From Octopus bimaculoides (Eukaryota), in NCBI RefSeq assembly GCF_001194135.2, contig NC_068992.1:36813123-36866992 (forward strand): 53,870 bases of DNA, read 5' to 3'. This document shows, piece after piece, positions 17,898 to 52,600 of the stretch (the stretch's first letter is position 1; each line of letters begins with the position of its first letter). Under the pieces are notes generated by a model, which was given only the letters and a program-made list of their open reading frames with translations, was not told where the DNA came from and made no database searches. Made by a program: the position numbers and the translations under genes.

Positions 17898-17902
17898 TTT
17901 TA

Positions 17903-17955
<53 letters not shown>

Positions 17956-18154
17956 GAATCCTCTTTCAAAATGCGACTATTTTGGAAATTATTATTAGGC
18001 TGTGTACTAGCAGAAATGGTAGAAAGGTTTGGTGAAATGNNNNNNNNNNNNNNNNNNNNNNNNNNNNNNNNNNNNNNNNNNNNNNNNNNNNNNNNNNNNN
18101 NNNNNNNNNNNNNNNNNNNNNNNNNNNNNNNNNNNNNNNNNNNNNNNNNNNNNN

Positions 18155-20622: not shown

Positions 20623-21374
20623 GGTTCCAGTTCAACTGCTCGACGTGTAATTGCCCGACGGACAGTTACCCGATGTACAACTGCCCGGCGGACAACTCTC
20701 CGATGGACAACTGTCCAACGGATAACTTCCCGACGACAATTACCCGATAGAAACAACTGCCCGATAGATAGCTTCCCAACAGACACTTTCACTTTATCTT
20801 TATCTGTCCTTCATTTCACTTTACATGTCATTTGGGCGAATCTTCCTGTACACAAAAATTGTATTTTTCCTCAGTTTGCTGAACTAAAGAACCACCAGGT
20901 GTCAAAAGACTTTAGCTTTTGTGCTAGCAATGTTGTAATAACATTTGAGCAATTACAAGAAAATTTGTGCCATGAAGCAGATCCAGTCATTGATTATTTT
21001 GAAGATGCTTATATCAGTGGAATACGACAGCGTAACAGAGGCAACCCACTCTTTTCTGTTTGTATGTGGAACATGAATTACCACGTATGCAATGATTTAC
21101 CACGAACAATTAATTTTTTGGAAGGATGGCATAACCATTTACAGGCGAATATAACGTCAAGTCATCCAAATATCTGGCGTTTTCATCAGGTATTGAAGGT
21201 GGAACAAGCACTTAACGACACTATCATCGACCAAATGCTGGAAGGATATCAGCCTTCACCCAAAAAGAAAAAAATATCAAGATTTAACTAAAAAATTGCA
21301 ATTGTCCGTCAAGCAACTGTCCGTCAGACACTTGTCCATCGGGCTCTTGTCAGTCGGGCAGTTGTCCCGATACC
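20623..21374 (+). mobile_element. Internally deleted Mutator (MULE), Phantom-like element with repeat-rich TIRs and 9-bp TSD
   Basis: Ends GGTTCC../..GATACC with inverted arrays of a ~15-bp gacaactgcccgacg unit. Flanks are TACAGTAAT (20614-22) and TACGGTAAT (21375-83). The interior encodes a MULE C-terminus (DYFEDAYI..MWN..LPRTINFLEGWHN..HPNIWRF). Confidence 0.85.
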
Positions 21375-26800: not shown

Positions 26801-27812
26801 TTGTAGCTGTCTAACTTTTCCTCATTATATTCGATTTCACTCTAATGAAACATATTTTGTTACATCTCGTCGTAATATTCAATTGTTTCAACTACTATTT
26901 CTATTCTGATGCAGACTATGACTTTTCATGAGATCTTTCTATCTTTAATACCAACTGATTTGTCTTCTATTGTTGACGTTATCTGCATCTAGACGTCTCC
27001 AAATAACTACTTTACAAAACGTATCTCTCTAAAAATCAATCCTCTTTCAATATCTTGCAAAATGCCTTGGTTGTATCTGTCACCAATTGTTTAAGCTTAT
27101 CTCAGCAGTCAAATGAATTTTCTATTCTTGTTAATATTTAGATTAGTAACTGTAATTAATTCTAAATTATCGTTTTAACACACATTCACAAAGAAGTCTT
27201 TTATGCTTGAAAGGGTAGCATTTAATTATATTCCCAGGCTATAACAATCTGTTCAAAACTCGTAATTGCCCATACTTTTTCCTATACAGATGTTTTAATT
27301 ATTTTACAGTACTTAAGATTTAGTTCTTGATATAAAATAAAATAAATGAAATAATTTTCTATAATAAATAGAACAGTTACTGCCTTAGGCTCTATAAATG
27401 TTGATCAAACAAATAACTAAAAACATATACTTAAATAATAATTTCTTATAAACCCAGAAGATTTATAGAGTTAACAAAAATAAATAAATTATATGATCAC
27501 AACACTTTCCGAAAATGCATAAATTGGGGTAAAATACCAACAAACTTGAAACAAATTTAAACTGAATATTTAGACAGAGAGATCTTATTTTGACAGATGT
27601 ATTTGATTCGAGTACATTATTTTGGTATTTTGAGACTTTTGATGAAATGAAAAGTAAGTCAAAATTTCAAGGACAATTATTTTCATTATTATAATTAGTT
27701 TGATAAACGCATCAAGATTATCCTTCCTTAAAACATGAATTGCTTCATCTACAAAAATGGTCAATACTCAAAATTAAAATATTTCATGGATAACAAAGAC
27801 ATTTATAATATA

Positions 27813-29820: not shown

Positions 29821-32800
29821 TTCTTTTATTGCCCACGAGGGCCAACACAGAGAGGACAATACAACCTGATTTTGGGGGTCAGATACACGAATGGGAATAC
29901 ACAAAATATGACTTTTAAAAATTTAACATAATATAAATGAACGAATGATGGGACCGAGGATAGAGTGGAAGCACGGGTTTAGCTCGGGCCCCACGAGCTC
30001 CGCCTCGCCACTGATAACTGAGATAAGCCCTGTACCGCGTTCAAGAGGTTACTCCTCTCGCAACGTCCACGCTATATTCTTCCATCGGTTCTTAAACATT
30101 TCCGCAGTCAGGCATTTCCTCTCTAGCCCTATTTTCCATTTAAGGTGGAAGATGAAATAATCCACCAGTGCAGAGCCAGAAATGAAAATGCCCGACTTTA
30201 ACCCTTTCCCTCTAGTTCTCTAAATAACCTTTCTTGCAGTTGCTACTACAGTGAGAAAACAAATCTTACCTTCTTTCGAGAGGAAATCAGGTGGGTCAAT
30301 TTTTAATATAGACTCAGTCGATAGCTGTACTCTTCCTGTACTTGACAACAGTTGTTCAGCATAAACCCACACTTCCGACACCTCCGAACACTGCACAATA
30401 GCGTGCGGGACAGTTTCCCTATCCCGCCCACATCTTGGACAGGTCGAAGAGCCACGGCCACTATGCCTTGTGAGTTTGTCCAAAACAGGTAAAGCTCCTC
30501 GGTAACACTGTCATGCCAGAGACTTCTGAAAGTTATCCAGGGTCTTCGGCCCGAATGTACGTCGGAACAGACTGGTCAGATGATTATCGTCGAGACCTAA
30601 GGTATCGTTACATTTCGCCTCTACAAGCCCTCTATAAAAGAAAGTGGTGGAACTCCCACCGCAGTCATTGCCCGAGCAACGGAACAGCAGGAGGGCCTTT
30701 CGACACTCCGTATACCATGTACTCAACTTCGATCTTCGATTCAACCAGGTTTCCCATCCACCGAAACTAGTGAACTTGGGAAACATCTGTTTCGCCAGCG
30801 AAGACCACACCCGTTCACCATCCAGGTTGAGCAAAAGATGTCTCAACCTCAGCGCATTTTTGCGCATCAACAGCCAAGGCATCCCCAGCCCACCCTTTAA
30901 CGGTTGTTGGCAGAAAATAGAGCGTCTCGCAAGTGGATTCGAGCCCTTCGACAAAAAGTGGAAGAGCTATCTTTCCAACTTGATCAACCACGAATCAGAG
31001 CAAGGAACGACGGTTAGGCGGTAGGTTATGACCGATGCGATGAACATATTGGCTACCTCTTCCCTCCCTTTCAGGGATAGCCACCGCCAAGGCCAGGTCT
31101 TGACTATGTGGATCACCCTGCTCGATACCTCGGCCCAGTTCTTCTCTATTTGGAGGTCTGGTCCAAACCAAACTCCTAGCAACTTAATCGGACCCTCCGT
31201 CCAACGTCCTACGACGCTGTCAGGAGGCATCGACTTGCCTCTCCAGGTGCCGAGCTGCAAGCCGACTGACTTTTCACGATTAACTTTTGCTCCTGCCACC
31301 GTCTCGTAAACCTCAATGGCCTTGCCTACCTTCTGGAGGTGATCCAATTCGGTTACGATGATGGTGATGTCATCCACGTAGGCTGAAACCGACTTTNNNN
31401 NNNNNNNNNNNNNNNNNNNNNNNNNNNNNNNNNNNNNNNNNNNNNNNNNNNNNNNNNNNNNNNNNNNNNNNNNNNNNNNNNNNNNNNNNNNNNNNNNNNN
31501 NNNNNNNNNNNNNNNNNNNNNNNNNNNNNNNNNNNNNNNNNNNNNNNNNNNNNNNNNNNNNNNNNNNNNNNNNNNNNNNNNNNNNNNNNNNNNNNNNNNN
31601 NNNNNNNNNNNNNNNNNNNNNNNNNNNNNNNNNNNNNNNNNNNNNNNNNNNNNNNNNNNNNNNNNNNNNNNNNNNNNNNNNNNNNNNNNNNNNNNNNNNN
31701 NNNNNNNNNNNNNNNNNNNNNNNNNNNNNNNNNNNNNNNNNNNNNNNNNNNNNNNNNNNNNNNNNNNNNNNNNNNNNNNNNNNNNNNNNNNNNNNNNNNN
31801 NNNNNNNNNNNNNNNNNNNNNNNNNNNNNNNNNNNNNNNNNNNNNNNNNNNNNNNNNNNNNNNNNNNNNNNNNNNNNNNNNNNNNNNNNNNNNNNNNNNN
31901 NNNNNNNNNNNNNNNNNNNNNNNNNNNNNNNNNNNNNNNNNNNNNNNNNNNNNNNNNNNNNNNNNNNNNNNNNNNNNNNNNNNNNNNNNNNNNNNNNNNN
32001 NNNNNNNNNNNNNNNNNNNNNNNNNNNNNNNNNNNNNNNNNNNNNNNNNNNNNNNNNNNNNNNNNNNNNNNNNNNNNNNNNNNNNNNNNNNNNNNNNNNN
32101 NNNNNNNNNNNNNNNNNNNNNNNNNNNNNNNNNNNNNNNNNNNNNNNNNNNNNNNNNNNNNNNNNNNNNNNNNNNNNNNNNNNNNNNNNNNNNNNNNNNN
32201 NNNNNNNNNNNCTTCAATTACCTCCTCAGGTGTGATCGGCCCTTCACAGCTCTCTGTGTCCCGCCCCGATAGGCGCGGCAGCCCGGCGAGGAAGTCCGTT
32301 AGGTCCCTCCCGTTATCCGGTCCGCTGCCCCCACCGAAAAGCTGCGTGAAGTGCTCCTGAAAAGCCTCACACATCTCCTCGGGCTCGTTTATCAACTTAC
32401 TTTGGTTCGTCAAAGATCGGATTGTAGCATCATTACCACGTTGGGCTTCCACCACTCGGGCTCATCCTGCGGCCCTGATTCCCTCGCAACCCACAGCACA
32501 GAGTCTAGCCCTGACAATGCAACCCTTGTGTTTGGCTTTGAGGTGCTGGTTTAACGCCAGTCTCTTGGCCTTCACCTGAATCGCAGAGCCAGTTCTCATT
32601 GTTCCCTCTAATTCCTTAACTAAAACTGATTCCCTCCTACTCTCTCTAGCCACTAAACCTATGCTATATCTAATAGACTCAAATTTAATGGCTCGCTTGC
32701 GGGCATACCACCATTTATTATTAATAATGGTACCGGTTAATGCCCTCTGAATCAACAACCTAATCCGATCTCTGTACTCCTTAATCGCCAAAAGGGATGT

Positions 32801-35200
32801 ATTAAGTTTCCAGTAGCCGAAGCCTCTATTATATAGCTTATCTATGTCAAGCCTACAGGTGATCATTTTATGATCGCTGTAGCTGACTGGGTAAAACTGT
32901 GGACACTTAGCTATATTTCTATCTACTTTTCTAATTAAGACTATCTATGTATGATCTGGAAGATCTGTTGCTATTTGACCAAGTTCACATTGGAGCGTTC
33001 GGAAATTCCAGCCTATAAGGATCTGTTAGCTTAAAGCGGTTTAGCAGTTCCAGGAAGCAAGAATTACCTTTTCTAGTAGTTCTCGAGCTAACATAATCTA
33101 CGCGTACCTCGCAGATTGTGTTAAAGCCACCTAGCACAACTAAAGTGTGTGATGTACCGAGAAACTTCTCCAGATTCCGATAATAATCACTTTGCCCGGA
33201 TGGCTGGAGTGCATAAATTGCATAGTCTGAAAACTTTACCATGGCTGAACGTCAAGTCCATGACGACCAGCCTACCTTCTGGATCTGAAAAAATTAATTT
33301 TTTCTCAGAAACCTGGTTTCTTTTTAATAGGACCAACACCCCTCCCCACTAGAAGGACAGTCTGGAGAGAGAAAAACTCTCGTAGCCATTCAACAGGGGA
33401 GCAGATCTCTTGGCCCCCTTAACCGGGTCTCTTTAGCAACAATAACATCCAATTTCCGCAACATGATGTCATTAAGGACCTTACTTCCATTCTGACATCA
33501 GGCTACGCACATTTATACAACCTACATGAATGTTTGACATCGCTTACCTCTGCATCAGTGGTTCGAGGTTCCTTCGTTCTCGTTTTCTTTCTCCTTTTCC
33601 CGGGCTCGTGGCGTATTTGGACGTAGGCCCTCGTAAATATATGGAGAAAAATCCATTCTGAGAGGGCCTATGTCGTGAAAGAATTCGGACTTAATCCGTC
33701 GGTAATCCTTCCAGCCTACCCTGTAGATGAGAAAGTCTTTTGATGATGTTTTTTTCACCCGTTTGGCAGATGAAATAGCTGCCAAAAGGTTAATCAGTCT
33801 ATTACGTGATGCCTTGATGGCCATGTATGTATTTTCTTTTTTATTTTTCGTTCTTCTTTTTTAAGTTCAGTTTAGTAGGGGTGGTCTGTGTTCTTTTCTT
33901 CTTTTATTTTTTTGGAAAAAGTCGACCACCCCTCCTCTCTATCTTTCTCTTCACTCTATTCTGTCGATATTGGTGTTAACTCTACTTTCGGTGTTGGTGC
34001 TGGCGTTTCATTTGTTGTTTCTTCTAATTCTTCTTCTTCTTGTTCTTTTTCTTTCGGTTTACATTCCGACCTGATGTGGCCCTTCAACCTGCAGTTAAAA
34101 CACCTTAGTTTTCTTCCTTCAACAAATACTATCAATCTTTCTTCTCTGCCAACATTTACGATTTCCGCAATGTCTTCGAGGGTTGCGACTTCTGCTTGAA
34201 TTAGCATTGTCGATTCTCCTCCTTTCCACAGAGGCCTGGGGTATAGTTATTTTGTCCTCCAGGCCCATCGTGATAGCTGCCACTAAACAGGTAGCATCAA
34301 CTATTGGAGGGATGTTGTTGACTTTCCCCTTTGACGTTCTTCTTCCCATATATACGGGAAGAAGACCCACCTCCTCCGTTCTGAGGGTCACCGAGGAGTA
34401 CTTCTTATCTGCTTCTTCTGACCTAAACTTCACTTCGACCGTTCCAAATATTTTGCCACGGTTAATGTACGTAATATCAGGTCAAATAGGTTTGAGGTAT
34501 TTTTCCACAATTTTCTCCTCTGTTTTATATATNNNNNNNNNNNNNNNNNNNNNNNNNNNNNNNNNNNNNNNNNNNNNNNNNNNNNNNNNNNNNNNNNNNN
34601 NNNNNNNNNNNNNNNNNNNNNNNNNNNNNNNNNNNNNNNNNNNNNNNNNNNNNNNNNNNNNNNNNNNNNNNNNNNNNNNNNNNNNNNNNNNNNNNNNNNN
34701 NNNNNNNNNNNNNNNNNNNNNNNNNNNNNNNNNNNNNNNNNNNNNNNNNNNNNNNNNNNNNNNNNNNNNNNNNNNNNNNNNNNNNNNNNNNNNNNNNNNN
34801 NNNNNNNNNNNNNNNNNNNNNNNNNNNNNNNNNNNNNNNNNNNNNNNNNNNNNNNNNNNNNNNNNNNNNNNNNNNNNNNNNNNNNNNNNNNNNNNNNNNN
34901 NNNNNNNNNNNNNNNNNNNNNNNNNNNNNNNNNNNNNNNNNNNNNNNNNNNNNNNNNNNNNNNNNNNNNNNNNNNNNNNNNNNNNNNNNNNNNNNNNNNN
35001 NNGCTACCTCGGCGAACTTTTTTGACTTCGCTGACGGTGATATTTTCTCTTCAAAAATGTTTAATTCCCTCGGCGTCACTGTCGGTGAAATTCTTTCTTC
35101 GGATCTTTTCCTTTTGGCCGGCACATAAAAAAAGTAATTTTTTGTAACTGAACACTTTCGAATTTCGTATACTGGTAGAATGTGTCATTTAAAACATCAT
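29821..35200 (-). mobile_element. Near-full-length Tx1-clade (L1 superfamily) LINE, decayed and gapped
   Basis: ORF1 starts MPAKRKRSEE (35124) and has a CCHC knuckle CFNCRLKGHIRSEC. ORF2 has APE motifs (VGCINVRSL, LVVLGGFN, GFGYWKLNTSLL), RT SAYVDDITII and a C-terminal CPRCGRDRETVPHAIVQC. AATAAA lies at the 3' end near 29825. Confidence 0.9.
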
Positions 35201-37229: not shown

Positions 37230-38372
37230 TTTCATGCCATCATTTTAACATGAGACGTTTTTGTTCCAACTCTAGTTTGGATTTGAGTTGTTTCACAGCT
37301 TTAGCTGTTTTTCTTTATCTTTATAGATATCAGGTACTATAATTTCTTTCTTGTATTTTTCAGCTTACTTAAAGACAGAAGACAATTTTGTGGCTATTTG
37401 TACAAGTTTCCTTGCTTCTGAATCCTATGGTAGTTATTTCATAGTAGTTTTCTAGCTGTATAAGGATTCTACCACCTTCAATATGTTATGTATATAACCT
37501 TTCTATGTCAGATTTTGGGCGGTGCATCCTAAATTCTCTCATTATTTTTCTTACTTTCCTGCCTATTTTGATTAGTTCATTTAGAGTCCAGTTAAGAATG
37601 TTGTAGCTGTAACTTATAACTGGGACGGCTAGAATATTGATACCTATTATCTTGTTTTTCGCATTGAGCGCTGTTTTCAGCATTAATCTAACTCGTCTAT
37701 AGAATTCCTTTCTTATCTTCTTTTTCATTTGTGCGTGTTGTATCGTATTTAGTTCATTGATTCCTAAGTATTTGTATGTCTGGTTTTGGTCTAACTCTCT
37801 TATTTCATTTGCTTTATGTAGTGTGACTTGTTTTTCTCTTTTCAAGGTTGCTCTGGCACATTTTTGTAAGCCGAATTTCATGTTTATTTCTTTGGTAAAT
37901 ACACGCACGGTCTGTAGTTTTAGATCATCCATATATAAGAGATGGTTGATTGTTTTGCCGTAACAGTTGTTTCCACATCCAGTTCTGTTTAGCATGTAAG
38001 GTAAAGGTGTTAGTGCTAAGCAGAAATGGGTGGAAAGAGCGTGTATCTCTTGAATATTCCTCTTTTAATGGAGATGGCTTTGGTTTTTATGAGTCCCTCT
38101 TTTGTCTGGAGCTGTTTGCCATTTATTCATGGCATGTTTTATATATTTCATGATTGTTGATGCTACCTTGCTGGTGGCTAGTGTTTCTAGGCCCTATGTG
38201 TGGGGAATACTGTCAAAAGCCTTTCGATAATCGATCCAAGCCATACCTAAACCCTTCTTTTTCCTTCAGCTGCGTTCAGTTATGGCTTTATTGATCAATA
38301 GCTGGTCTTTACAGCCTTATGAGCCCTTGCAGCATTTCTTTCGCTCTTTTGGAAACAGGTCTTCTTCCAGAT
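37230..38372 (-). mobile_element. Dong/R4-like LINE RT fragment
   Basis: KDQLLINKAI..GMAWIDYRKAFDSIPH, NHLLYMDDLKL, YKYLGINE, RRVRLMLKTALNAKNKIIGINILAVPV. Confidence 0.85.
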
Positions 38373-38417
38373 TGTTACTTTTATCATCATCATTATAATC
38401 CTCATTATTATTATTAA

Positions 38418-38645
38418 AGCGGCGAGCTGGCAGAATCGTTAGAACGCCGGGCAAAATGCTTAGCGGTATTTCGTTCGTCTTTTCGTTCTGGGTTCAAATG
38501 CCGCCGTGGCCGACTTTGCCTTTCATCTCTGCGAGGTCGATAAAATAGTACCAGTTGATTACTGGGGACGATGTAATCGAGTTAACCCACCTCCAACAAA
38601 ATTTCAGGCCCCGTGCGTATAGTAAAAACATTATTATTATTATCA
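38418..38645 (+). mobile_element. SINE family 2 (Meta-domain-like), well-preserved copy
   Basis: ggcgagctggcagaatcgttagaacgccggg..gttcaaatgcc..gactttgcctttcatc..ggtcgataaaatagtaccag, with (ATT)n on both sides. Confidence 0.8.
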
Positions 38646-38939
38646 TTGCTGTGGTTGTAACCAGATTTTTATGTATTGTTCTCGTATATTGCTAAAATCA
38701 TTGCAAAATGTGTGAAATCAAATATCATAATAATGACTTCGAAACTTGCAAAATTGTCTTCATATTAAAAATGACCATTGAGAAAATGTTTTCCTTGAAG
38801 TAGATAGAAAAATGGGAAAATGGGAATAAACAATCGCATGACTTGAAAAACAGAAACTAATGCATTATAACTGTCCAGTTTATATCAGATTAATATGCTC
38901 AGATTTTACATGACAAATGTATTACATTTTCTTTTGCAG

Positions 38940-39605
38940 TTACTCTCCAGTGAAAGAGAATCTCGTCCAGTGGAAAACGAGGAAAGTGCCCCAGATCTCA
39001 AGAAACGATACATTCTTCACTCCGTTGAATATCCAGGACTTGATCCAGAAGATCTTATAGAAACTACATCTTTGGATAAGCGAGGATTTGATTCAATCGA
39101 TGGAACAGGTTTCCGTTCAATGGGGAAACGACCTTTTGATTCCATATCGGGGAGTTCATTTTCACAATTAGGAAAACGAAAATTCGACTCTATTTCTGGG
39201 GGAGCATTTAGCCAAATGGGAAAAAGGCCTTTTGATTCGATTGATGGTGGTTCATTTAATACAATGGGTAAGAGGAAATTTGACTCCATTGCAAGCAGCT
39301 CATTTGGTCGTATGGGTAAACGTCCATTCGACTCAATATCTGACGGAATGTTCAACACAATGGGTAAAAGAAAATTTGATTCGATCTCAGATAGTAATTT
39401 TGCTAGCATGGGTAAGCGTCAGTTTGATGCTATCAGTCATAGTCGTTTCTATAAAATGGGAGATGGAGCTGGATCCCGACTCTTTCGAAGAAATTTCGAT
39501 CGTATTTCCGGTAATGAAGGATTGTCGCCTGGATTCCCAAGATTAATGGGAAGTCACGTGAAACGTCCCTTTAAACTTTACAGCCTTAAACCATCCAAAG
39601 ACTAA
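38940..39605 (+). CDS. Neuropeptide precursor, pedal peptide/orcokinin type; main (terminal) coding exon
   Basis: Intact ORF after a splice acceptor (ttttcttttgcag|38940; alternative ttactctccag|38951). Seven 48-nt units from 39084 each encode a 13-mer plus GKR (GFDSIDGTGFRSM, PFDSISGSSFSQL, KFDSISGGAFSQM, PFDSIDGGSFNTM, KFDSIASSSFGRM, PFDSISDGMFNTM, KFDSISDSNFASM). These are followed by QFDAISH.. and NFDRISGNEGLSPGF... No signal peptide lies within this exon. Confidence 0.9.
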   Translation, partial: LLSSERESRPVENEESAPDLKKRYILHSVEYPGLDPEDLIETTSLDKRGFDSIDGTGFRSMGKRPFDSISGSSFSQLGKRKFDSISGGAFSQMGKRPFDSIDGGSFNTMGKRKFDSIASSSFGRMGKRPFDSISDGMFNTMGKRKFDSISDSNFASMGKRQFDAISHSRFYKMGDGAGSRLFRRNFDRISGNEGLSPGFPRLMGSHVKRPFKLYSLKPSKD

Positions 39606-39643
39606 AAATGGACTCTGAGACTGGATTTAGAGAAATCAAAACA

Positions 39644-39653
39644 AATAAATAAA
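39644..39653 (+). promoter_or_regulatory. Candidate polyadenylation signals (overlapping AATAAA) for the neuropeptide gene
   Basis: aataaataaa ~40 nt after the stop codon; AT-rich DNA makes chance occurrence likely. Confidence 0.35.
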
Positions 39654-40179
39654 TGCATCAGTAAAAATGTAAAAAGCTGAGAACCAGCAGAATAGCAAAA
39701 TTTTACTACTCCATACCGGAAAGTGAGAACAATATGTTAAAAAATATAATAATCTGCGGTTCAACATCAATTGAATTTTTAAAAAAGTATTCAGATATTT
39801 TAAATGACCAAAAATTCCTAAACAATTTAATATTTTCAAGTATAAATAACTAATATGTTTTATATATANNNNNNNNNNNNNNNNNNNNNNNNNNNNNNNN
39901 NNNNNNNNNNNNNNNNNNNNNNNNNNNNNNNNNNNNNNNNNNNTATATATATATATATATATATATATGCATGTGTGTGTCTGTCTGTGTGTATTGTTTC
40001 TTTTCCGTTTCTCAGCTGGTTTTGTTCCAGTTTGGAAGATAATAAATTGCACCTTTGAACTAAATCTATGTCTATTGTCAGTCATTTACTTCCTGTTTGA
40101 GACAAATATTTGTTTCATTAATTATCAAACACTTACCAAATTATATTTTCATATCACTACTGTTTGCCATATGCATACA

Positions 40180-40422
40180 TAAAGTACCTACAACTACACA
40201 CATATAAATACATTGCACCAATGGAAACTCTAGTATCATCTGCATAATGAACTGCTAGATCATAATTGAAAGCTGCTTCATAAAAGTTACTTCTCTAAAC
40301 TGTTACAACTGCTCTTCGTTCTGCAGTGGAGATTCTATGCTTCCCTTTCTGCAGCTGGACAGAGACATTCTTTTGGCTGAACTTGACATTGTAGACAAAT
40401 TTGACACTTTCCTTCTAGGCAT
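40180..40422 (-). mobile_element. Helitron Rep/Hel N-terminal fragment
   Basis: Minus strand MPRRKVSNLSTMSSSAKR, then after a frameshift AAFNYDLAVHYADDTRVSIGAM. This resembles Helitron N-termini (MPRRKR..; AFxYDP..Y...IG.M...C). Confidence 0.5.
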
Positions 40423-41810
40423 GGTTATATATGTATACAGAAATATACGGGTGCTGAAGATAGTAAACAATAAAAATAACTGGGTAACGGAAATTATATT
40501 TCTTAATACGACGGGCAGAAAGTAAATAAGACATTTTTACGGAAAATAGAAAATTGCATGGGTTGAAGCGAAATTTGTCAGTGAACCAAAGAGCCAGTAT
40601 CGAAGGAACCAGAAAAAGCCGTTAACCACAGGAAAACACAAAACCGTTGCAGAAGTAAGTAAGAAATTTTTAGGGAAATTAACTAAGATTTAAGTGAAAT
40701 GTTTGAATAACTTCTGTCAGTAAATTATGAACTTACTTTTAACAGCAATTCCGCCAACAACAAGAAAGCACAAACTTTGCAAAAGTAAATAAGAAATTTG
40801 TAGGCAAATTTAACGAAGTGCACGGATTGAAGTGAAATTTATGAAGCTACTTCTGTCAGTAACTTATGTATGAAATTACTTTCACCAGTAATTGTGAACT
40901 TCTTTCGCTCAGTAATTTGCTGTTGTTTGTAAATAGCGATTGAAAACTTACTGTGAAAACAATAGTGAGTGAGATATAGAGAGAGGAGGAGAGGAAAGCT
41001 AGCTAGCTAGTTAAACAAATAAGATAGATAAGATATAGAGAGATACAAAGAGATAGATATAGAAACAGTGATGGATAGACAGATATAGAGAGACAGAGAC
41101 AGAGACAGAGAGAGAGAGAGAGGAGACAGAGACAGATAGAAAGATATAGACATCACTGAAGCTAGAAAACTGGAAGCAAATATTTTTTTAAACTTTCAAA
41201 GACATGAATCTAATATAAAAGCAATCTTTTTTTAATTACCAATGGGAGACAATCAATTTCAGTAAGGTGCCATTAGATGATCACACCGGAGCAGTCACCT
41301 TTCTGAGTATGATCTTAAAATGCATGCGATAGTTGGACCCGATACGTGAATTCCAAAAGTTTGAGGAGTGTGGAACTACTTCTTAACTATTATTATTCCC
41401 AGGTGTACTCTGACGCGGTGTAGTAGCACTTGCTAGGGTCCCAGGTATGGGCTAACTAGCATGTCGACTAAGCCTTGCCTTACCTTCCTTCTTTTGGCAT
41501 ATTTAGAACAGTATCTGTTCCAGTATCTGGCAGCTGCCCCTGGTCACATACCCTCTGCGTCAGTTCGTCATTGAGTGGCAAGTTGTATGTTTTGTGCTGC
41601 TATTAGATACAACAGGACAAACCAAGCAGGCTGGCTGTAAAGGCGCCTCGTCACGTACCGTAGTATGTAACGTTACATACCGTGGTAGGTCACTGTAGCT
41701 TGGACTCGATCCCGGTCGTCCTGGATCTCTTCTTTATCATTGTTTTCTTCGAAACATATGTCGGAAGTAAAAAGATGTGAATAAGAATAACACCTGCGTT
41801 TAACTCCAGT

Positions 41811-43497: not shown

Positions 43498-44274
43498 TGT
43501 ACTGTAATTCTCCAGGTTTATAATCTTAAGAATATTATTTCTCTGGATCGCATATTTCCATGTAATCCTTGCTTTTGTCAGGCTATGCTATTATGCTAAT
43601 TAATAATGTCTCAAAGGTGTCAATTAGCGATGTCGTTGATAATTTTTTCCTTACCTCAATCATGCTGGTGTTATATATTAAAATTCCCCTAATCGAATTA
43701 TATTCATAAAAAGTATACAACTATATTATTACCCTCAAATTTGACAAACACTCACAACTTATTTCTTTTAAAACTTCATTGCATGAGATAGATACCACGA
43801 AATTCCTCGAATTGAGATCCATCATTTAATTTTAATTTAAATATAGCTTATTTTAAAAATAAATAAAGTTAATTATACTTAAATCCAATTTTTTGCTTTA
43901 TATTCATGATATTTTACCTCACAACTTTTTCACTACAACTTTTTGTTGCATGGGAACAAAACTATAACATTTTTAATACTTTCTTCTATCATTGAAGCTA
44001 AGATAAATATATTTTGCTTTTAAAATACAAAAGCTATTTAGATCTAAATTTGATTGGTGACGTTACTTACTCTCCTATAACGTTGCTACATGTAAAAAAA
44101 TTTTCTGCTGGATTAAATCTCAATTTTCTATACCAAAATGTAGCTAGGGATTAGTCCTCTTCAAAGATGTTAACAGTTTTCAATTTGGTTAAGAACTGAA
44201 TTGGCGACAAGCTCTGAAAGATGATGCGTGTAAGTAAATTGCGACCGTAGTTGAATAATAAATGTTTGGTATAA

Positions 44275-44277
<3 letters not shown>

Positions 44278-44341
<64 letters not shown>

Positions 44342-44364
44342 TGATGATGATGATGATGAGGATG

Positions 44365-44425
<61 letters not shown>
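44278..44425. repeat. Compound (AAT)n-(GAT)n-(AAT)n microsatellite
   Basis: Direct reading of the sequence. Confidence 0.95.
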
Positions 44426-44426
<1 letters not shown>

Positions 44427-45030
44427 GGATCCACCGGTATGAGAAACGCCAACGTTTCTTTGAACAAAACAAACAGTTCAAATTCAATACCCAAAAATTT
44501 TACCAACCAACAGCAGAAGTGGAAGAATTCTGGAAACAAATATGGTCGGTGAAGCNNNNNNNNNNNNNNNNNNNNNNNNNNNNNNNNNNNNNNNNNNNNN
44601 NNNNNNNNNNNNNNNNNNNNNNNNNNNNNNNNNNNNNNNNNNNNNNNNNNNNNNNCTTTCTAATTGATGTATCAATACCAGCAGATGACAACGTTTCCCT
44701 AAAATTAATGGAAAAACTTTCAAAATATAATGACCTGGAAATAGAGGTAACTCGAATGTGGAATCTGAAAACAGAAACAATTCATATCATAGTAGGTGCC
44801 TTAGGTATAATAAAACAATATTCAGACAAATACATAACAAAAACATCAGGACTATCACGCATATATAACATACAGAAAATAGCACTACTTGGCACTTCAC
44901 ACATCCTACGTAAAACACTTTCAATACAGTAACAATAAGAGCATCACAGCAAACCACAGCACATACCCAAGGCACACAGAGCTGCGCTCGGTAGTGAAGT
45001 GAAAGCACGTTATAAAAATAAAACTACCGA
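44426..45030 (+). mobile_element. 5'-truncated Dong/R4-like LINE (gapped) flanked by (AAT)n
   Basis: Starts RIHRYEKRQRFFEQNKQFKFN..EVEEFWKQIW. After the gap it encodes the RLE tail FLIDVSIPADDNV..KYNDLEIEVTRMWNLK..IVGALG..QKIALLGTSHILRK, then a short 3' UTR and aataatgataataat. Confidence 0.85.
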
Positions 45031-45099: not shown

Positions 45100-48000
45100 T
45101 ACCCAGATTGGTAATTACCCAGAATCATTAACAAGTGACGTCGTGAAACCGACTAGTCGTTGGCGACTAAACCAGCAACCCCGCTAAGTTTGCTTGGTGA
45201 GGAAGGTGGATTTTCGACACACTGCGGGATTAAAAACAAAACCCAGTAAGGGGCAGAGGAACTCAGAAAAGTCAATGTTCACTCTGAAAACGGCTAGAGA
45301 GAAAACGTGAGCCTTGGTTGGCAGTTTGTCTAGAAGGTTCACTTTGATTTAAAACTGGAGTAAATAGGACTCCTTAATCACAGTGGTGACAACCTGTCAG
45401 TGTCCAATGGCTCCATGCCTGGGATGAAGACGAATGAACCGCGAATCGGAGTTTGACTCCGGAGCAATATTTGGATGAAGAAATGGGACCAACTGACGCA
45501 CACCTTTCTGATAGTGAGAATCAGGATCATGGTCCCCAACAAACAGAAATTCGAAGAGAACAGGCCCAAGTTATGGGTAGTAAGAGCTCTGCAGTCTTGG
45601 TTGACAATCTTACTAAAGATAGCGTCTTGATATAAATACTGGCTGGTGGCTAACCCTAAAACACACACCTCAATGTTGAGTGAAAATGTTTAATACAAAT
45701 ATATCAAATAATGGTGTTAATGTGGCTGAAACCAAAGGTGAAACCCTTTCACCCGATAGGTGCCCTGTGGATGTGCAGCGCAAACCTTGTCGTCATCTAG
45801 AGACTACTTGTAAACAAAGCCAGCGGGAGAGACGAAAGTGAGATAAGGAGGTAAACCGAACGGTAATTGAATGTTGGATCAGTAGTGAACCCCAGCAGAA
45901 GAGGATTCCGACAACGAATGAAATTAAAATGGAATGAGATAAGGCTCTTCGAAACAAGTGAGCAACGGTTAGCCGACCAGGCAAGAGCAATAAGAGCAAA
46001 AGGGAGGTTAACAGATATGGAAATAGAAGAGATAAAAAGAAAAATAGTAGACAGAAATAATACTTCACCAACAGATAACGTGCCCAGTGAGACACAGAAA
46101 ATGAAAGGCGGTAGTGAAGAAGTAGAGCAAAGTGTAAATGTAAATGCATTCTCAGCAAATGAGGTACATTGAACGACTCGAGCTCAATGTTGAAACCTAA
46201 AATATAGATTCGGTTCTTGGACGAGGAATATAACAGAAACTAAGAAGATTATTTGGGCTGCAGCTATGGTTGCTGCAGACAAGGTTGGGTACAAAAGAAA
46301 AGAACAAGAGAAGGTAAAAAAACCATATTGGCGTAGACAAATTTTTGAGAAACAAACAAAATTAAAAACACATTTAGAAGTTGATAGAATAATGCCGGAA
46401 AGAACATACAGAATAAGAGATAAAGGTTATGATGGAGTATTGGAAGAATTGAAACAAGGAGTAGTAGCAATCAAAGCAAAACTGTAATGATATGACAATA
46501 GAAAAAGACAGATCATGCAAAACAGATTGTTTGAAGCAAATCAGAAGAAAATGTTTCAGAAACTAGATGGACAAAATCACGTAACAATGATATCAGATGC
46601 AGAGGAAAGCAAGGCTCTCTGGAGAGGGATCTGAGAACAACCAGTAGAGCATAATGATGAAGCGGAGTGGCTGCATGAAATCCCAGATAGATTAAGAAAT
46701 ATAGAAGTCCAAGAAGGCATAAAGATAACTACAGAAATGATTAAAAAAACAGTTACGAAAATTCCCAATTGGACTCTTCCAATTGGGAATTTTCGTAACT
46801 GTTTTTTTAATCATTTCTGTAGTTATCTTTATGCCTTCTTGGACTTCTATATTTCTTAATCTATCTGGGATTTCATGCAGCCACTCCGCTTCATCATTAT
46901 GCTCTACTGGTTGTTCTCAGATCCCTCTCCAGAGTGCCTTGCTTTCCTCTGCATCTGATATCATTGTTACGTGATTTTGTCTATCTAGTTTCTGAAACAT
47001 TTTCTTCTGATTTGCTTCAAACAATCTGTTTTGCATGATCTGTCCAAGGTCCAAGGTTGTTGGATGAAGAAGCTGAGAGGGCTCTATGAAAGGATAGCAC
47101 AACAGTTAGATGAATACTTGAAAGAAGGCGTAGTACGCAGCTGGATGACAAAGGGAAAGACATTGTTATGTGCCAAGGGTCCTGAAAAGGGAAATGTTGC
47201 ATCCAACTTTATACCAATAATATGCTTTCACTAATGTGGAAACTAATGGCAGGTGTTTGGTCGGTGAATTGTACAGATACTTGGAAATCAGTGGGCTGCT
47301 ACCCATTGAATAGAAAGGGTGCCGAAAATGGAGCCAGGTAGCGAAAGATCAGCTCTTAATTGATAATTTAATCATCAGGAACTGCAAGAGAAGACATACA
47401 AAACCGGAGCATGGCATGGGATGACTATCGCAAAGCATACGATGTGACACCAAACTCCTGGATAATAAGAGCAATGGAAATGTATGGAGTAGCATCGAAT
47501 ATGACAAGCCTTATATGGAATAGCATAAAATACGGGAGAACGGAATTGCCAGCAGGGAAGCAAGTACTAGGTGAAAATCAAGAGAGGATTTTCCACGAGG
47601 ACAGTGTGCCCCAACTGATATTCGTGCTGGGAATGATCCCCTTGAGTGAAATGTTACAGAAAACAAATTTGGGGTATGTTCTGAGAAGAGGTAAGGGAAA
47701 ATTAAACCACTTGCTATTCATTGACGACAAAAACTGAGGCAGAACTGGACAGCCTAGTCGAGACTGTGCGGATTTTCTATAATGATATGAAGATGGAGTT
47801 TGGACACTCAAAATGTGCTACGATGATGATGAGACGAGGAAAGTTTGCCAGAACAGAAGGCATATTGTTGCCAAGTGGTAAAATGACGAAGGCAATTCAA
47901 CCTTAATCCAGCTATAAATACCTGGGAATACTTGAGGCAGATGGAATCAAACACCATGACATGAAGGAAAGGACAAAAAGAGAGTAACTAAGGCGAGTGA

Positions 48001-48910
48001 GAAAAATATTGGCTTCACTGAGTGCGTATCGAACTCGAGAGTTTAATGAGTTACCTAGTCGTAAGTAAGGAAACCTTGCTACTGACAGTTAAGAACGAGG
48101 GAGTAGTCAGAGCAGAACAAAAGGGAAAACAAAGGGAGAAGTTCAAAAAGGACATGAAGAAGAATTACGCAAGAAGAGACTACATAATCAATTCCATGTA
48201 GCCACAACAGAAGTTGCTGGAAAAATAGATGGGATTTGGTTGATGAAAGAGACCGAGAGCACTATACCGGACCAATCTCTGACCACGAACTGGAGAGTCA
48301 ACCTGAGGGATGAGCAAGTGTCTCTGCTATAGAGTGGATGAACGAACGAATTACCTAGATTTTCCCAACACCACTACAAGTTGTGCCGATACGACCAGGT
48401 AGCGACAGTACTCCACTGGAAACTGTTCGACAATTGGGGGCTAGAGAGAGGCAAGACGACGTGGTATGAGTACGAACCACAGAGAGTGGCGGAGTCGGAG
48501 ACTAGCAAAATCCTTTGGGATTTCCCAATCCTAACAGACCAGGTGCTAGAGCATAACAGACCAGACCTAGTGGTGGTGGACAAGGCACACCACATATGCT
48601 ATATAGTTGACCCACGAATAGTCATGAACAAAATAGCCCGACTATGGAAAATGAAGGTGAAGATAGTACCAATTATTGTTAGGTCCTTAGGAACTGTATC
48701 AGAAGGCATCAAGAGGAATACAAAAGAAATTGGATAAGAGTGCCCGTTAGTACTGTTACAAAAGTTTGCCTCCATGACACGGCCATAAAAAACCAGGTAT
48801 TACATAGGTGAAAAGACTGAATAGCATGCTACCGTAGGCTGCAGGTAGTAAGCTCGCTACGCATGCAAGACACCAAGAGCTCCAACAAAACTTGTGATAA
48901 AGAAAAAATA
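45100..48910 (+). mobile_element. Near-full-length decayed Dong/R4-like LINE
   Basis: N-terminal [15 protein letters not shown]; RT pieces [42 protein letters not shown]; RLE KILWDFPILTDQVLEHNRPDLVVVDK. Ends in (AAC)n(AAT)n. Confidence 0.85.
46507..47044. repeat. Near-perfect palindrome (267-bp arms, 4-nt loop)
   Basis: 46507-46773 is the reverse complement of 46778-47044. I found two mismatches; the loop is ctct. Confidence 0.95.
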
Positions 48911-48942
48911 ATAACAACAACAACAACAATAACAACAACAAC

Positions 48943-49002
<60 letters not shown>

Positions 49003-49010
49003 AACAACAA
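48910..49010. repeat. (AAC)n-(AAT)n microsatellite at the 3' end of the LINE
   Basis: Direct reading of the sequence. Confidence 0.95.
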
Positions 49011-49639
49011 CATGGATATGCTACACGGGTTCTCCATTCAATCTAATCTAATAACATCGGTGGAATGGGATAAAGGAACCTATGGAAAACTTGAAGGAGG
49101 CGGCCTTTTAACGAAAATAATCACAAAAACGAAATTTTACTGCCAGACAAAGCACAGTCACAGTAAAACATGTGCGAAAGACACATGCGAAATCAACACC
49201 GGAATGTTTACAAATTATAAAGTATATGTGGAACAAAACAGTAAGTACTTAAATTGATTAATTACGCATACACTCGAATGTCTACACAATTATACATACA
49301 TTTAATAACGACAGGACTACACATACATCCCAATGTTTACATAACTACATGAAATTTACAGAACACACATACGCGCATATGAAAGAACGTGTCACAAACG
49401 AAGCAAAAAAAAATTACAAAACGATTCTATTTTATTTTTCGAACTAAGACAGACAGAGTGAACAATTCATAACTTTAAAAACACCACAGAAAGCTATGCC
49501 CGGAGATACATCTATCAAGAACAAAAAATATAGACAAATACAGATCTGTTAGCCTTAAGAATCTACGTTACGAGAAATGCTTTCATTCATAGAACGAACT
49601 CAGAGGTAGTGTTGTCTCAAAAAGTTAACCCTAAACATT

Positions 49640-52600
49640 CTGATCCGTCCCCTAATCTCAACGTCCAAGCTCTTCATGCCTCAGTGATAACAAAGCAAAA
49701 TACAAACCGAATCGGCCGTCAACTCGTGAACAAGGGCCGCGCACACCAGTGAGGAACCAGACTCGGTACGAAAAATCAGCTACTGATTCAAACGTTCCCG
49801 AAACACAGGAGCTGCAATACCCCACAACTGGAATATCCCAACAGATGGCCATCCACGCTCGTCATCAAATAACCAAAAGACAAAGAATGAAAAATGGTCT
49901 AGGGGAGATAATAAAGAAGTTTTAAGGACTTCTATCATGCCATGTATTTCTCCACAAATAAATCTAATTCTGAGCAAGCCTACCTAAACTGGAGACAGAA
50001 GCACCTTGAAGTAAGATCCGACATAGACAGTAACAAACTTGCCAAAGTTAAAAGAAACATTATGAAAAAGAAATTACTAACTGAATTAGAGATTGAGCAA
50101 ATTAAACAGTCAGTGAGGGATAAAGGGAACGAAGTTGCAGCTAAAGAAGATACTACAGAGGAAATAATTACAGACCAGCCCAGGTTTGATGAAAATGCAG
50201 TAATGATAGAAAGAGTCAATGTAACTGATAGGCAAAGTGAAATACTCGCTGAACCAACCATAAACACCAAGGTAGATGAAAATCAAATATATGAACAAAG
50301 TCACACAGAAATTGACCCAACTGAATTAAATGATCTAAAAGATCAAACCGTGACTGAATGACTGAAAATAAAGAAATCAGTATGAATGAACGTGACACTC
50401 TCCCCAAAATTCGCAACTCTAACCAAAGCCTGCAAGTAATTGGTAAAATCCGCCTTGCACTTAAGGATATAATTTCAGCTAATGATGTTGCCATTACAGA
50501 TCTCAACCACCTGTACTATGCATCCGCGTAGATCTCAACGATTCTGTTTGGTGAAACGATTAGAAAATGACAACATTCCCACAAAAAAGCCTACTTGGCA
50601 AGAGCGTATTCATCACCAAATTCAGCTACTTAGGTCTAAAAAAAACTTAAGTTTAAAAAAACTTAAGTTTAAAAAAACTTAAGTTTAAAAAAACTTAAGT
50701 TTAAAAAAACCTAAGTTTGACAAGACTAGCAAACCAACAAAATCCGAAAATTAAAGAAAAAATATATGAAAACCATATCTGACATCGATACCACCATAGA
50801 AACTTTCAAGAAAAAGGTATGTGCTAAAGCTGCTCGCATAGCACAGTATGAAAAGTGCGTTAGATTCTTTAAGTACAACAACATGTTCAGAAGTAACCCA
50901 AATGATTTTTACAGGAAGGTAGGGAAAATACAAGTTACAGTAAAGTCTGTCCCAGTGCAGGAATTTTGGAATAAAATTTGGGTAGAAGAAAAAGCACACA
51001 ATAAAAAGGCCCTTTGGATTGATAGAATATCTACTGACTTAGACTCCTAAGAATAGCAAAAGTGAGAGTGTATCAAGGTAGAGGATGTAAGATCTGCTCT
51101 CAGGAAGTCAAGCAAATGGATGTCTCCAGGAAAAGATAAAATTCCTAACTTTTGGTTGAATGCCTTCCCAGAGAGTCATGGACTGCTAACAAAACTTTTT
51201 GTAAACGTTTTGCAACAACCTAGTATGATTCCCTCTTGGCTAGTTAATGGTGTTACATTCCTACTTCCAGAAAAGGAAGAAAGAAATGAACCAAAAAATT
51301 ATGGATCCATAACCTACTTAACAACAAAATATAAAATACTAACATCATCCTAGATTGTATATACCTATACCTTTTTTTAATAAGAAGTGGCGTGTTCCCT
51401 AATGAGAAAAATGATGTAAACGTGGGTCCTGTAGTTGTAAAGATCAGCTACTCATCAATATGATGATCTTGGAAGATCGTCACAAACAAAACAAAACTTT
51501 TTGGTAGCCTAGGTAGACTATAAAAAAGATTTGGGTAGTCTACCACATAGCTGGATTAAGAAATGTCTGGAAATGTATGAGATTGTACCTACTCTGCGAA
51601 ACTTCTTTTCTGTAAGTATGAGATCATGGAGAATAAGACTGACCTTGAACAGTGACAATGAATCTCTCAATGCTGGAGATGTAAGAATTTCATGTGGTAT
51701 TTTCCAGGGTGACTCTTTATTACCACTCCACTTTTGTCTAGCTTTAATACCTCTTTCGAAATTGCTCAATGATGAACAATATGGCAATAAAATATTTGAT
51801 GAAAATATAAATCATCTCTTTTACATAGATGATCTTTGCGAAGAATGACCAACAACTACAGGGCTCACTAGCAATTGTTAAGCAATTCAGTGATGAGAGC
51901 AGGATGCAATTTGGCCTCGATAAATGTGTAAAAGCTACCTTTATCAAAGGAAAAAAATGACAGAAACATCCAACGTTAATCTTGACCAACAGAATGTCAT
52001 AAAGGAATTAGAACCAGCAGATAGCTACAAATACCTAGGGGTATATGAAGGTGATGGAATCAAACATACAACGATGAGGGAAAGGATCAGAAAAGAATGT
52101 TATCGCAAAGTAAGGGCAATACTCAAGATAGAGCTGAATGCAAGAAACAGGATCGAAGCAATCAATACTTTAGCCATACCAGTCGTGACTTACAGCTTCA
52201 ATATCATTAACTGGTCAATTACTGAAATATGTAATTTTGACTGAAAAATACGAAAATTGTTGACGATGCATAGAATGCACCATCCTAAGGCAGATATAGA
52301 ACGACTTTCCTTGCCAAGAAAAGAGGGTGGCCGTGGACTTTCACAACTGGAATTAAGAATGAAGATTGCCTCAATTGGCCTAAACACCTACCTGAAAAAC
52401 TCTGATGACCGGATGTTAAAACTTGTCTTAAAGCATGAAAACAAGAAAGCATCATACTCTGCAACAAAACAGGCAAAGGAATATCTAAGTGAATTCCAAA
52501 TACAACATATTCCAGAATTAAACGTACTGGAAACAAGCACAGAAAAAGCTAAGCGTATGAAAACCCGTGCCAAAACTGCTGCCTAGGATATTCTTACTGA

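What the first reader, a model, noticed from the sequence alone, without database searches (positions are those of the whole stretch)
38940..39605. Amidated pedal-peptide/orcokinin-type precursor, the only intact coding exon in a sea of dead TEs
Seen: seven exact 16-codon units with conserved xFDSIxxxxFxx(M/L)-G-KR but diverged synonymous sites, which suggests protein-level selection. Known: FD-x-I starts and a distal Phe typify orcokinin (NFDEIDRSGFGFN) and molluscan pedal peptides, most of which are not amidated. Here all seven carry a Gly amide donor, and the ninth peptide (NFDRISGNEGLSPGF..) looks like a classical non-amidated pedal peptide. Inference: one precursor releases both an amidated and a non-amidated class.
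Basis: partly seen in the sequence, partly recalled or inferred. Interest (0 to 1): 0.7.

Follow-up and report, generated by a model that had tools for sequence, protein, structure and literature searches.

The report
Octopod pedal-peptide/orcokinin neuropeptide precursor exon
This is the main coding exon of an ordinary neuropeptide gene of the pedal-peptide/orcokinin family, probably from an octopus; it encodes seven short amidated peptides plus a conserved non-amidated one, and snails are already known to make amidated peptides of this type.

Summary
Window 38940-39605 (+) is an open exon that starts right after a strong splice acceptor and ends at TAA. It holds seven exact 16-codon units, xFDSIxxxxFxx(M/L)-G-K-R, at 39084-39419. 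A decayed eighth unit, a ninth peptide (NFDRISGNEGLSPGFPR...) and a short tail follow. Synonymous sites between units are saturated, while the motif residues hardly change.

An exhaustive HMMER search returned 129 hits. Every unit-bearing hit I inspected has an orcokinin- or pedal-peptide-like unit. The best hit (E 3.6e-96) is the Biomphalaria glabrata pedal peptide 3 precursor, which has the same unit length. Its 13-mer amides have been detected by mass spectrometry, so amidation is not new for this family.

The only ortholog found is a two-exon gene of Argonauta hians, annotated "orcokinin peptides type B-like". Its exon 2 starts at the homologous residue in the same phase. The ninth peptide's 17-residue core is under strong purifying selection between the two species (pN 0.05, pS 0.67).

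The signal-peptide exon was not found in the window, which has twelve assembly gaps. Transcription and processing could not be tested.

Verdict: a real gene and a new member of a known kind. Interest is low to moderate.

The parts
38921..38939 (+). Polypyrimidine tract and AG splice acceptor (ttacattttcttttgcag)
   Evidence: Read directly. The Argonauta ortholog has ...ctgttttctttttcag immediately before the homologous codon (LLSREQ against LLSSERES), in phase 0.
38940..39605 (+). Exon 2: 221 codons plus TAA, the whole peptide-bearing part of the precursor
   Evidence: It is the only frame of six without an internal stop. Homology: E 3.6e-96 to Biomphalaria pedal peptide 3 and E 6.5e-18 to the Argonauta ortholog.
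38940..39083 (+). N-terminal propeptide: LLSSERESRPVENEESAPDL-KKR, then the acidic spacer YILHSVEYPGLDPEDLIETTSLD-KR
   Evidence: Translation. The basic sites lie at 39000-39008 and 39078-39083. This part is weakly conserved with Argonauta.
39084..39419 (+). Seven 48-nt units, each coding a 13-residue peptide plus Gly-Lys-Arg; predicted products xFDSIxxxxFxx(M/L)-NH2
   Evidence: Searches give unit coordinates, codon table and selection measures. The register is the same as in Biomphalaria PFDRIGTSSFTSF-GKR.
39420..39491 (+). Decayed eighth unit QFDAISHSRFYKMGDGAGSRLF-RR; the GKR site is replaced by GDG
   Evidence: In Argonauta this stretch has no FD motif, but ...SRLF(K/R)R is conserved.
39492..39566 (+). 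Ninth, non-amidated peptide NFDRISGNEGLSPGFPRLMGSHV-KR with a conserved 17-residue core NFDRISG(N/S)EGL(S/A)PGFPR
   Evidence: Against Argonauta the core has pN 0.05 and pS 0.67. The KR site after SHV is not conserved; Argonauta has NR.
39567..39605 (+). C-terminal tail PFKLYSLKPSKD and the TAA stop codon
   Evidence: RP(F/Y)xLY is shared with Argonauta.
39644..39653 (+). Two overlapping AATAAA hexamers 39-48 nt after the stop, possible polyadenylation signals
   Evidence: The DNA here is AT-rich, so these could be chance matches. Not tested.

Best explanation
The region is the second and main coding exon of a neuropeptide precursor gene of the pedal-peptide/orcokinin (PP/OK) family. It is closest to the amidated 'pedal peptide 3' subgroup of molluscs, and the source animal is probably an octopod cephalopod.

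Shown here:
- The exon is intact and starts at a splice acceptor whose position and phase match the Argonauta ortholog.
- It encodes seven 13-residue peptides, each followed by Gly-Lys-Arg.
- These peptides, and the ninth peptide's core, are under purifying selection.

Inferred from the standard neuropeptide processing pathway:
- An upstream exon supplies the signal peptide, as in Argonauta.
- Prohormone convertases cut after KR, KKR and RR, a carboxypeptidase removes the basic residues, and peptidylglycine alpha-amidating monooxygenase turns the exposed Gly into a C-terminal amide.
- This would give seven Met- or Leu-amide 13-mers plus at least one non-amidated peptide, NFDRISGNEGLSPGFP(R...).
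- Neurons would release these peptides. By analogy with relatives, I expect them to modulate muscle or reproductive-tract activity through receptors that are still unidentified.
For: - Anatomy and selection.
- Ortholog: P0002, 'orcokinin peptides type B-like [Argonauta hians]', has two exons. Exon 1 is a 29-codon signal peptide ending at a GTGAGT donor, and exon 2 starts at LLSREQ, homologous to window LLSSERES.
- Family: 129 HMMER hits; every unit-bearing hit inspected has a PP/OK-type unit.
- Best hit: P0004 (E 3.6e-96) is Biomphalaria glabrata LOC106074337. It contains the peptides PFDRIGTSSFTSFa, RFDRIDRGSAFSRFa and RFDRISKNSQFNPFa, which PMC5455113 reports as mass-spectrometry-detected pedal peptide 3. 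Its unit length is the same 16 codons.
- Ninth peptide core: pN 0.05 against pS 0.67 between the window and Argonauta.
- Octopus context: an 'orcokinin peptides type A' contig is among the 20 most abundant O. vulgaris CNS transcripts (PMC3387010), and 'orc' marks a sparse neuron class in the O. bimaculoides optic lobe (PMC9815951). Neither was shown to be this gene.
Against: - No signal-peptide exon was found in the 38.9 kb upstream by tblastn, blastn or two signal-peptide/donor scans. The secretory nature of this copy therefore rests on the ortholog.
- No transcript or peptide data could be queried for the source species.
- No Pfam model matches.
- No close ortholog other than Argonauta was found among 5.8 billion proteins, so orthology to gastropod pedal peptide 3, as opposed to another PP paralog, rests on short repeated units.
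- Assignment to an octopod is indirect: the best ortholog, 36% GC, and a short interspersed repeat shared with Argonauta.
Confidence: 0.88

Rival explanations
1. It is an orphaned or recently inactivated exon. The peptide exon is still open, but the signal-peptide exon or promoter has been lost among the transposon insertions, so no secreted product is made.
For: No exon 1 was found in the window. The upstream 8 kb is full of reverse-transcriptase fragments and gaps.
Against: - 221 codons are open in 36% GC DNA, while the other five frames carry 4 to 27 stops.
- The acceptor is intact and conserved in position and phase.
- All seven GKR sites are intact.
- Assembly gaps at 34533-35002 and 31397-32211 lie 3.9-7.5 kb upstream. 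The Argonauta intron is 5.3 kb, so an 87-nt exon could easily be hidden there.
Confidence: 0.08
2. It belongs to a different named cephalopod family. Candidates are So-orcokinin B (formerly FLGamide, annotated in Octopus as feeding-circuit-activating peptide) and an FMRFamide-type precursor, the label some Biomphalaria records give to the best hit.
For: GenBank entries for the best hit carry the name 'FMRF-amide neuropeptides-like'. Sepia So-orcokinin B also mixes amidated and non-amidated peptides (PMC9410093).
Against: - The exon has no RFamide ends, no DS(L/I)GGG hexapeptide, and no FLG-amide or PYY ends, which are the marks of So-orcokinin B.
- The Biomphalaria protein contains the pedal peptide 3 sequences verified by mass spectrometry, so 'FMRF-amide' is an automatic mislabel.
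Confidence: 0.02
3. It is a chance open frame in a DNA tandem repeat or transposon fragment, with no coding function.
For: Two other long ORFs overlap the array, 39017-39409 (-) and 39232-39546 (+), as repeats often produce.
Against: - DNA identity between units is only 0.60, and third codon positions are close to random at 0.38 (random expectation 0.26), while the motif residues are invariant.
- Homologs exist across phyla.
- Exon structure is conserved with Argonauta.
Confidence: 0.01

Closest known systems
Pedal peptide 3 (Pep 3) precursor of the snail Biomphalaria glabrata (LOC106074337; P0004)
   Same: - Best hit of the exhaustive search (E 3.6e-96).
- Identical 16-codon unit: a 13-mer, x-F-D-x-I-x4-F-x2-hydrophobic, followed by Gly-Lys-Arg.
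- Its amides were detected by mass spectrometry, including forms that keep a basic residue at the N-terminus (PMC5455113). That supports KFDSIS... rather than FDSIS... as the product here.
   Different: - The snail peptides end in Phe-amide and mostly read FDRIG; the window peptides end in Met- or Leu-amide and read FDSI(S/D/A).
- The snail precursor has about 21 amidated copies and no non-amidated C-terminal peptide.
- Orthology as opposed to paralogy was not resolved.
'Orcokinin peptides type B-like' of Argonauta hians (P0002), an automatic NCBI annotation
   Same: - The only ortholog found.
- Two-exon structure with the exon 2 boundary and phase conserved.
- Met-amide 13-14-mers (KFDSISDEGFGSM-GKR).
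- The SRLF(K/R)R-NFDRISG.EGL.PGFPR...RP.xLY tail is conserved, 63% identity over the tail.
   Different: - Argonauta has only two intact amidated copies plus one decayed copy, against seven plus one here.
- The KR site after the ninth peptide is NR in Argonauta.
- Synonymous divergence in the conserved tail is near saturation (pS 0.66), so the two species are distant.
Classical molluscan pedal peptides (Aplysia pedal peptide; Haliotis pedal peptide A, e.g. PFDSISSGGGMAGFA)
   Same: They share the PFDSIS N-terminal motif, tandem copies between dibasic sites, and expression in molluscan ganglia (PMC6523705). The window's ninth peptide has their long Phe2...Gly-Phe spacing and lacks an amidation signal.
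   Different: They are 15-mers with no C-terminal Gly and are not amidated. The distal Phe is at position 14, not 10. The seven main units of the window do not fit this pattern.
Arthropod orcokinins (NFDEIDRSGFGFN type), including amidated chelicerate forms
   Same: They have the same Phe2-Asp3-x-Ile5...Phe10 spacing. The spider Trichonephila 'orcokinin peptides type B' has NFDEIDRAGFRTM-GKR, also a 13-mer Met-amide.
   Different: They carry an acidic FDEIDR core and come from a different phylum. The Met-amide resemblance is most simply explained as convergent. Insect orcokinin genes use alternative splicing to make A and B forms, for which there is no evidence here.
Sepia officinalis So-orcokinin B (FLGamide) and So-orcokinin A
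   Same: So-orcokinin B is a cephalopod PP/OK-like precursor that yields both amidated and non-amidated peptides. It is made in the CNS and acts on the oviduct and nidamental glands (PMC9410093). So-orcokinin A is said to carry a 'DSI motif', like the window peptides.
   Different: So-orcokinin B is defined by DS(L/I)GGG and by FLG-amide or PYY ends, which are absent here.

Membership tests
Pedal peptide/orcokinin (PP/OK) neuropeptide precursors | Significant sequence similarity to recognised members | tested here: met
   129 hits at E <= 0.001 and 22 at E <= 1e-10. Named hits include orcokinin type A and B entries and Biomphalaria pedal peptide 3.
Pedal peptide/orcokinin (PP/OK) neuropeptide precursors | Multiple tandem peptide copies bounded by dibasic cleavage sites | tested here: met
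   There are seven exact units, each closed by a Gly-Lys-Arg site, plus further sites KKR (39000-39008), KR (39078-39083), RR (39486-39491) and KR (39561-39566).
Pedal peptide/orcokinin (PP/OK) neuropeptide precursors | Core motif: N-terminal x-Phe-Asp-x-Ile/Leu and a distal aromatic residue | tested here: met
   F2, D3, I5 and F10 are invariant in all seven units and also present in units 8 and 9.
Pedal peptide/orcokinin (PP/OK) neuropeptide precursors | N-terminal signal peptide (secretory precursor) | tested here: inconclusive
   The exon has none, and it was not found upstream. The window has twelve N gaps. The Argonauta ortholog carries one on a separate exon 5.3 kb upstream.
Pedal peptide/orcokinin (PP/OK) neuropeptide precursors | Expression in neurons and release of the processed peptides | not testable with these tools
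   No transcriptome or peptidome of the source species can be queried. The exact-sequence look-up found nothing.
Molluscan pedal peptide 3 subgroup (amidated 13-14-mers) | Units of 13-14 residues ending in a hydrophobic residue followed by Gly and a dibasic site | tested here: met
   All seven units are 13-mer + GKR, in the same register as PFDRIGTSSFTSF-GKR. Chemical amidation itself was not tested.
Molluscan pedal peptide 3 subgroup (amidated 13-14-mers) | Orthology to gastropod and bivalve pedal peptide 3 rather than to pedal peptide 1, 2 or 4 | tested here: inconclusive
   It is the best hit by a wide margin (337 bits against 198 for the next), but scores grow with copy number and the units are too short for a reliable tree. 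Synteny could not be examined.
Sepia So-orcokinin B / FLGamide (Octopus 'FCAP-like') | DS(L/I)GGG hexapeptide with FLG-amide or PYY C-termini (PMC9410093) | tested here: not met
   None of these motifs occurs in the 221-residue translation.

The most novel reading that the evidence does not exclude
Octopods may carry a hybrid pedal-peptide gene. One part is a variable array of Met-amide 13-mers of the pedal-peptide-3 type: seven copies here, two in Argonauta. The other is a single, much more strongly conserved non-amidated peptide with classical pedal-peptide spacing, NFDRISG.EGL.PGFP, ending at a conserved single Arg. If both are released they could act on different receptors. The gene might then preserve, or have re-created, the mixed state from which the separate pedal-peptide paralogs of other molluscs arose. 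No other protein with this tail was found among 5.8 billion.
Probability: 0.3. Interest if true: 0.4.

Novelty: new member of a known kind. Interest (0 to 1): 0.22.

Why it matters
- The exon yields a concrete, testable peptide set for an octopod: seven amides with [M+H]+ between 1370.66 and 1460.62, plus a conserved non-amidated peptide. The family is abundant in cephalopod brains, and no receptor for it had been identified as of 2017.
- It shows that an amidated, pedal-peptide-3-like form of the family is also present in octopods (this window and Argonauta).
- Copy number changes sharply between octopod lineages while one C-terminal peptide stays fixed.
- It does not change how the family is understood.

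Tried and rejected
- Tandem Repeats Finder on 38000-40500 found only a (TA)n run; the coding array is too diverged at DNA level.
- Pfam has no model for the exon.
- Exon 1 was searched four ways: tblastn with the Argonauta N-terminus, blastn with Argonauta exon 1 and its flanks, and two scans for ATG + hydrophobic stretch + phase-0 GT donor. Only microsatellite artefacts and weak candidates came up, for example 27113-27151 MNFLFLLIFRLVT|GTAATT and 37250-37333, which lies next to LINE remains. None is credible.
- The in-frame ATG at 38895 is rejected as a start. The 'FLLQ' it would add is simply the translated polypyrimidine tract, and the acceptor is conserved in Argonauta.
- The word-indexed searches found few or no further relatives. 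The window exon returned three proteins, and Argonauta is the only ortholog among them; the Argonauta protein returned only itself; a profile of the conserved tail returned nothing. An exact-sequence look-up of the 236-aa ORF also found nothing.
- The Sepia neuropeptidome paper that holds the So-orcokinin A sequences is not in the library.
- The O. bimaculoides 'orc' paper has no supplementary text, so the gene could not be matched.
- The strict P/K alternation at position 1 of units 2-7 suggested duplication of a two-unit block. DNA identity is no higher between same-parity units (0.60) than between cross-parity units (0.64), so I dropped the idea.
- Searches for a named PP/OK receptor found no paper.

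Full report
**What is in the sequence.** Reading 38700-39900 shows a pyrimidine-rich tract ending in AG at 38938-38939. An open frame follows and runs to TAA at 39603-39605. It is the only one of the six frames without an internal stop; the others have 4 to 27. The translation reads:
- LLSSERESRPVENEESAPDL-KKR
- YILHSVEYPGLDPEDLIETTSLD-KR
- seven units of exactly 16 codons (39084-39419)
- QFDAISHSRFYKMGDGAGSRLF-RR
- NFDRISGNEGLSPGFPRLMGSHV-KR
- PFKLYSLKPSKD, then the stop

The seven units are GFDSIDGTGFRSM, PFDSISGSSFSQL, KFDSISGGAFSQM, PFDSIDGGSFNTM, KFDSIASSSFGRM, PFDSISDGMFNTM and KFDSISDSNFASM, each followed by Gly-Lys-Arg.

**More than chance.** The units are only 60% identical as DNA, which is why Tandem Repeats Finder missed them.
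- Identity between units is 0.67, 0.74 and 0.38 at codon positions 1, 2 and 3. Random expectation for this base composition is 0.26.
- At the nine conserved columns the non-synonymous difference is 0.03 while synonymous sites are saturated.
- At the seven variable columns the two rates are similar, 0.61 against 0.68.
- Invariant Ser4 and Arg16 each use four codons.

So the array is old and has been kept at the peptide level, not by recent duplication or gene conversion.

**Family.** Pfam has no model. The word-indexed search found three proteins, one named: 'orcokinin peptides type B-like [Argonauta hians]', P0002. The exhaustive HMMER search found 129 proteins. Every unit-bearing hit I inspected carries an orcokinin- or pedal-peptide-like unit, and the names recovered include orcokinin type A and B entries from Limulus, a spider, a mite, a wasp and a mussel.

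The best hit by far (E 3.6e-96) is Biomphalaria glabrata LOC106074337. It contains PFDRIGTSSFTSF-GKR, RFDRIDRGSAFSRF-GKR and RFDRISKNSQFNPF-GKR. These are the peptides that Wang et al. 2017 report as mass-spectrometry-detected, C-terminally amidated 'pedal peptide 3' (PMC5455113). Its unit is also 16 codons, in the same register.

Amidated members are therefore an established subgroup. Further Gly-dibasic relatives occur in the snail Bradybaena (KFDSISGSSSFGRF-GKR), the spider Trichonephila (NFDEIDRAGFRTM-GKR), Limulus and the nematode Plectus. Classical pedal peptides such as Haliotis PFDSISSGGGMAGFA are 15-mers without Gly (PMC6523705).

**Gene structure.** The Argonauta gene has two exons.
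- Exon 1 encodes MKMESMFRVGFVVLLNLCLLTRAEQPTKT and ends at a GTGAGT donor in phase 0.
- After a 5.3 kb intron, exon 2 starts at LLSREQ behind ...ttttctttttcag.
- The window exon starts at LLSSERES behind ...ttttcttttgcag, so the acceptor position and phase are conserved.
- Both proteins end inside this exon.

The in-frame ATG at 38895 should not be read as a start, because the residues it adds are the translated pyrimidine tract.

I could not find exon 1 in the window. The window has twelve N gaps. Two of them (34533-35002 and 31397-32211) lie 3.9-7.5 kb upstream, in the range of the Argonauta intron length. An 87-nt exon hidden in a gap is the simplest explanation, but loss of the exon is not excluded.

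**Comparison with Argonauta.** Argonauta keeps only two intact amidated copies, both Met-amides, against seven here. The eighth unit of the window corresponds to a spacer in Argonauta, with only SRLF(K/R)R conserved.

The ninth peptide is the best-conserved part. NFDRISG(N/S)EGL(S/A)PGFPR has pN 0.05 against pS 0.67. Conservation drops right after the single Arg, and the KR site of the window is NR in Argonauta. This suggests a mature peptide ending at ...PGFP, cut at a single Arg. I did not apply a formal cleavage-site predictor, so the cut site is an inference that mass spectrometry can settle.

This peptide has the long Phe2...Gly-Phe spacing of classical pedal peptides. The seven amides have the Phe2...Phe10 spacing of pedal peptide 3 and of arthropod orcokinin. 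A profile of the tail found no other protein.

**How it most likely works.** By the standard neuropeptide pathway (established knowledge, not tested here):
1. A signal peptide takes the precursor into the secretory route.
2. Prohormone convertases cut at KR, KKR and RR.
3. A carboxypeptidase trims the basic residues.
4. Peptidylglycine alpha-amidating monooxygenase converts the terminal Gly to an amide.

The snail data show that a basic residue following KR is retained at the peptide N-terminus (RFDRI...a). I therefore predict KFDSIS... rather than FDSIS... for units 3, 5 and 7.

On function, relatives modulate muscle and reproductive-tract activity. Sepia So-orcokinin B peptides lower oviduct tonus and potentiate FMRFamide on nidamental glands (PMC9410093). 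No receptor for the family had been identified as of 2017 (PMC5656890), and no paper in the library uses the phrase 'orcokinin receptor'. I did not establish the current status beyond that.

In octopus, an 'orcokinin type A' contig is among the 20 most abundant CNS transcripts (PMC3387010), and 'orc' marks a sparse optic-lobe neuron class (PMC9815951). I could not link either to this gene.

**Source organism.** It is not named. The evidence is indirect: the Argonauta ortholog, 36% GC, dense microsatellites, and a roughly 100-bp interspersed repeat shared with the Argonauta locus at 76-86% identity. These point to an octopod that is distant from Argonauta, since pS in the conserved tail is 0.66.

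**Novelty.** The gene type is known, and automatic annotation recognises its ortholog. Amidated family members are known and chemically verified, and mixed amidated and non-amidated precursors are known. What may be new is modest:
- this particular precursor;
- the Met-amide form in octopods;
- the strong copy-number difference from Argonauta;
- the conserved classical-type peptide at the C-terminal end of an otherwise pedal-peptide-3-like precursor.

I rate it a new member of a known kind, interest 0.22. No step had to be referred.

Noticed in passing
window 12546-12645, 9217-9309, 4896-4991; L001 405-504, 3198-3292, 6371-6470, 13303-13397, 17445-17544, 22681-22769: A short interspersed repeat of about 100 bp occurs at least three times in the window and at least six times in the 26 kb Argonauta locus, at 76-86% identity between species. 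ARAGORN finds no tRNA in the window. It is probably an octopod SINE-like element and supports an octopod origin for the window.
   Followed up: partly
window 30967-31396 (-), 51531-51848 (+), 37486-37995 (-), 47411-47737 (+): Fragmented ORFs resembling reverse transcriptase. Two have weak RVT_1 matches below the Pfam cut-off (E 1.6e-5 and 0.0039). They are broken by stops and N gaps, consistent with decayed LINE-type elements around the gene.
   Followed up: partly
window 8788-9075 (+): A 95-aa ORF matches the Spin-doc zinc finger (zf-C2H2_12; E 3.3e-7, 30.4 bits against a cut-off of 27.3). From memory this finger is common in transposase-derived proteins, but I did not check that.
   Followed up: no
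window 20596-21291 (+): A 231-aa ORF without a Pfam hit. Its first third is a low-complexity Arg/Thr repeat. The rest contains a ...FLEGWHNHLQ... stretch that reminds me of transposase families. This is unverified.
   Followed up: no
window 39017-39409 (-) and 39232-39546 (+): Two long ORFs (130 and 104 aa) overlap the peptide array in other frames. They have no dibasic pattern and are most simply by-products of the periodic coding sequence.
   Followed up: partly
window 39084-39419: Position 1 of the units reads G,P,K,P,K,P,K, a strict Pro/Lys alternation in units 2-7. DNA identity is no higher between same-parity units (0.60 against 0.64), so it is either chance (about 1 in 10) or maintained at protein level. 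The Lys units create KRK tribasic sites.
   Followed up: yes
window 44189-44552; also 17672-17998 and 48756-49037: Long trinucleotide or low-complexity runs translate as poly-Leu, poly-Asn or poly-Ile. (TG)n, (TA)n and (CA)n microsatellites flank most of the twelve N gaps, which suggests the assembly broke at simple repeats.
   Followed up: no
P0004 cluster (Biomphalaria glabrata KAI8795535.1, KAK6965209.1): GenBank records of the pedal peptide 3 precursor are labelled 'FMRF-amide neuropeptides-like'. The sequence has no RFamide peptides, so this is an annotation error that could mislead name-based searches.
   Followed up: partly
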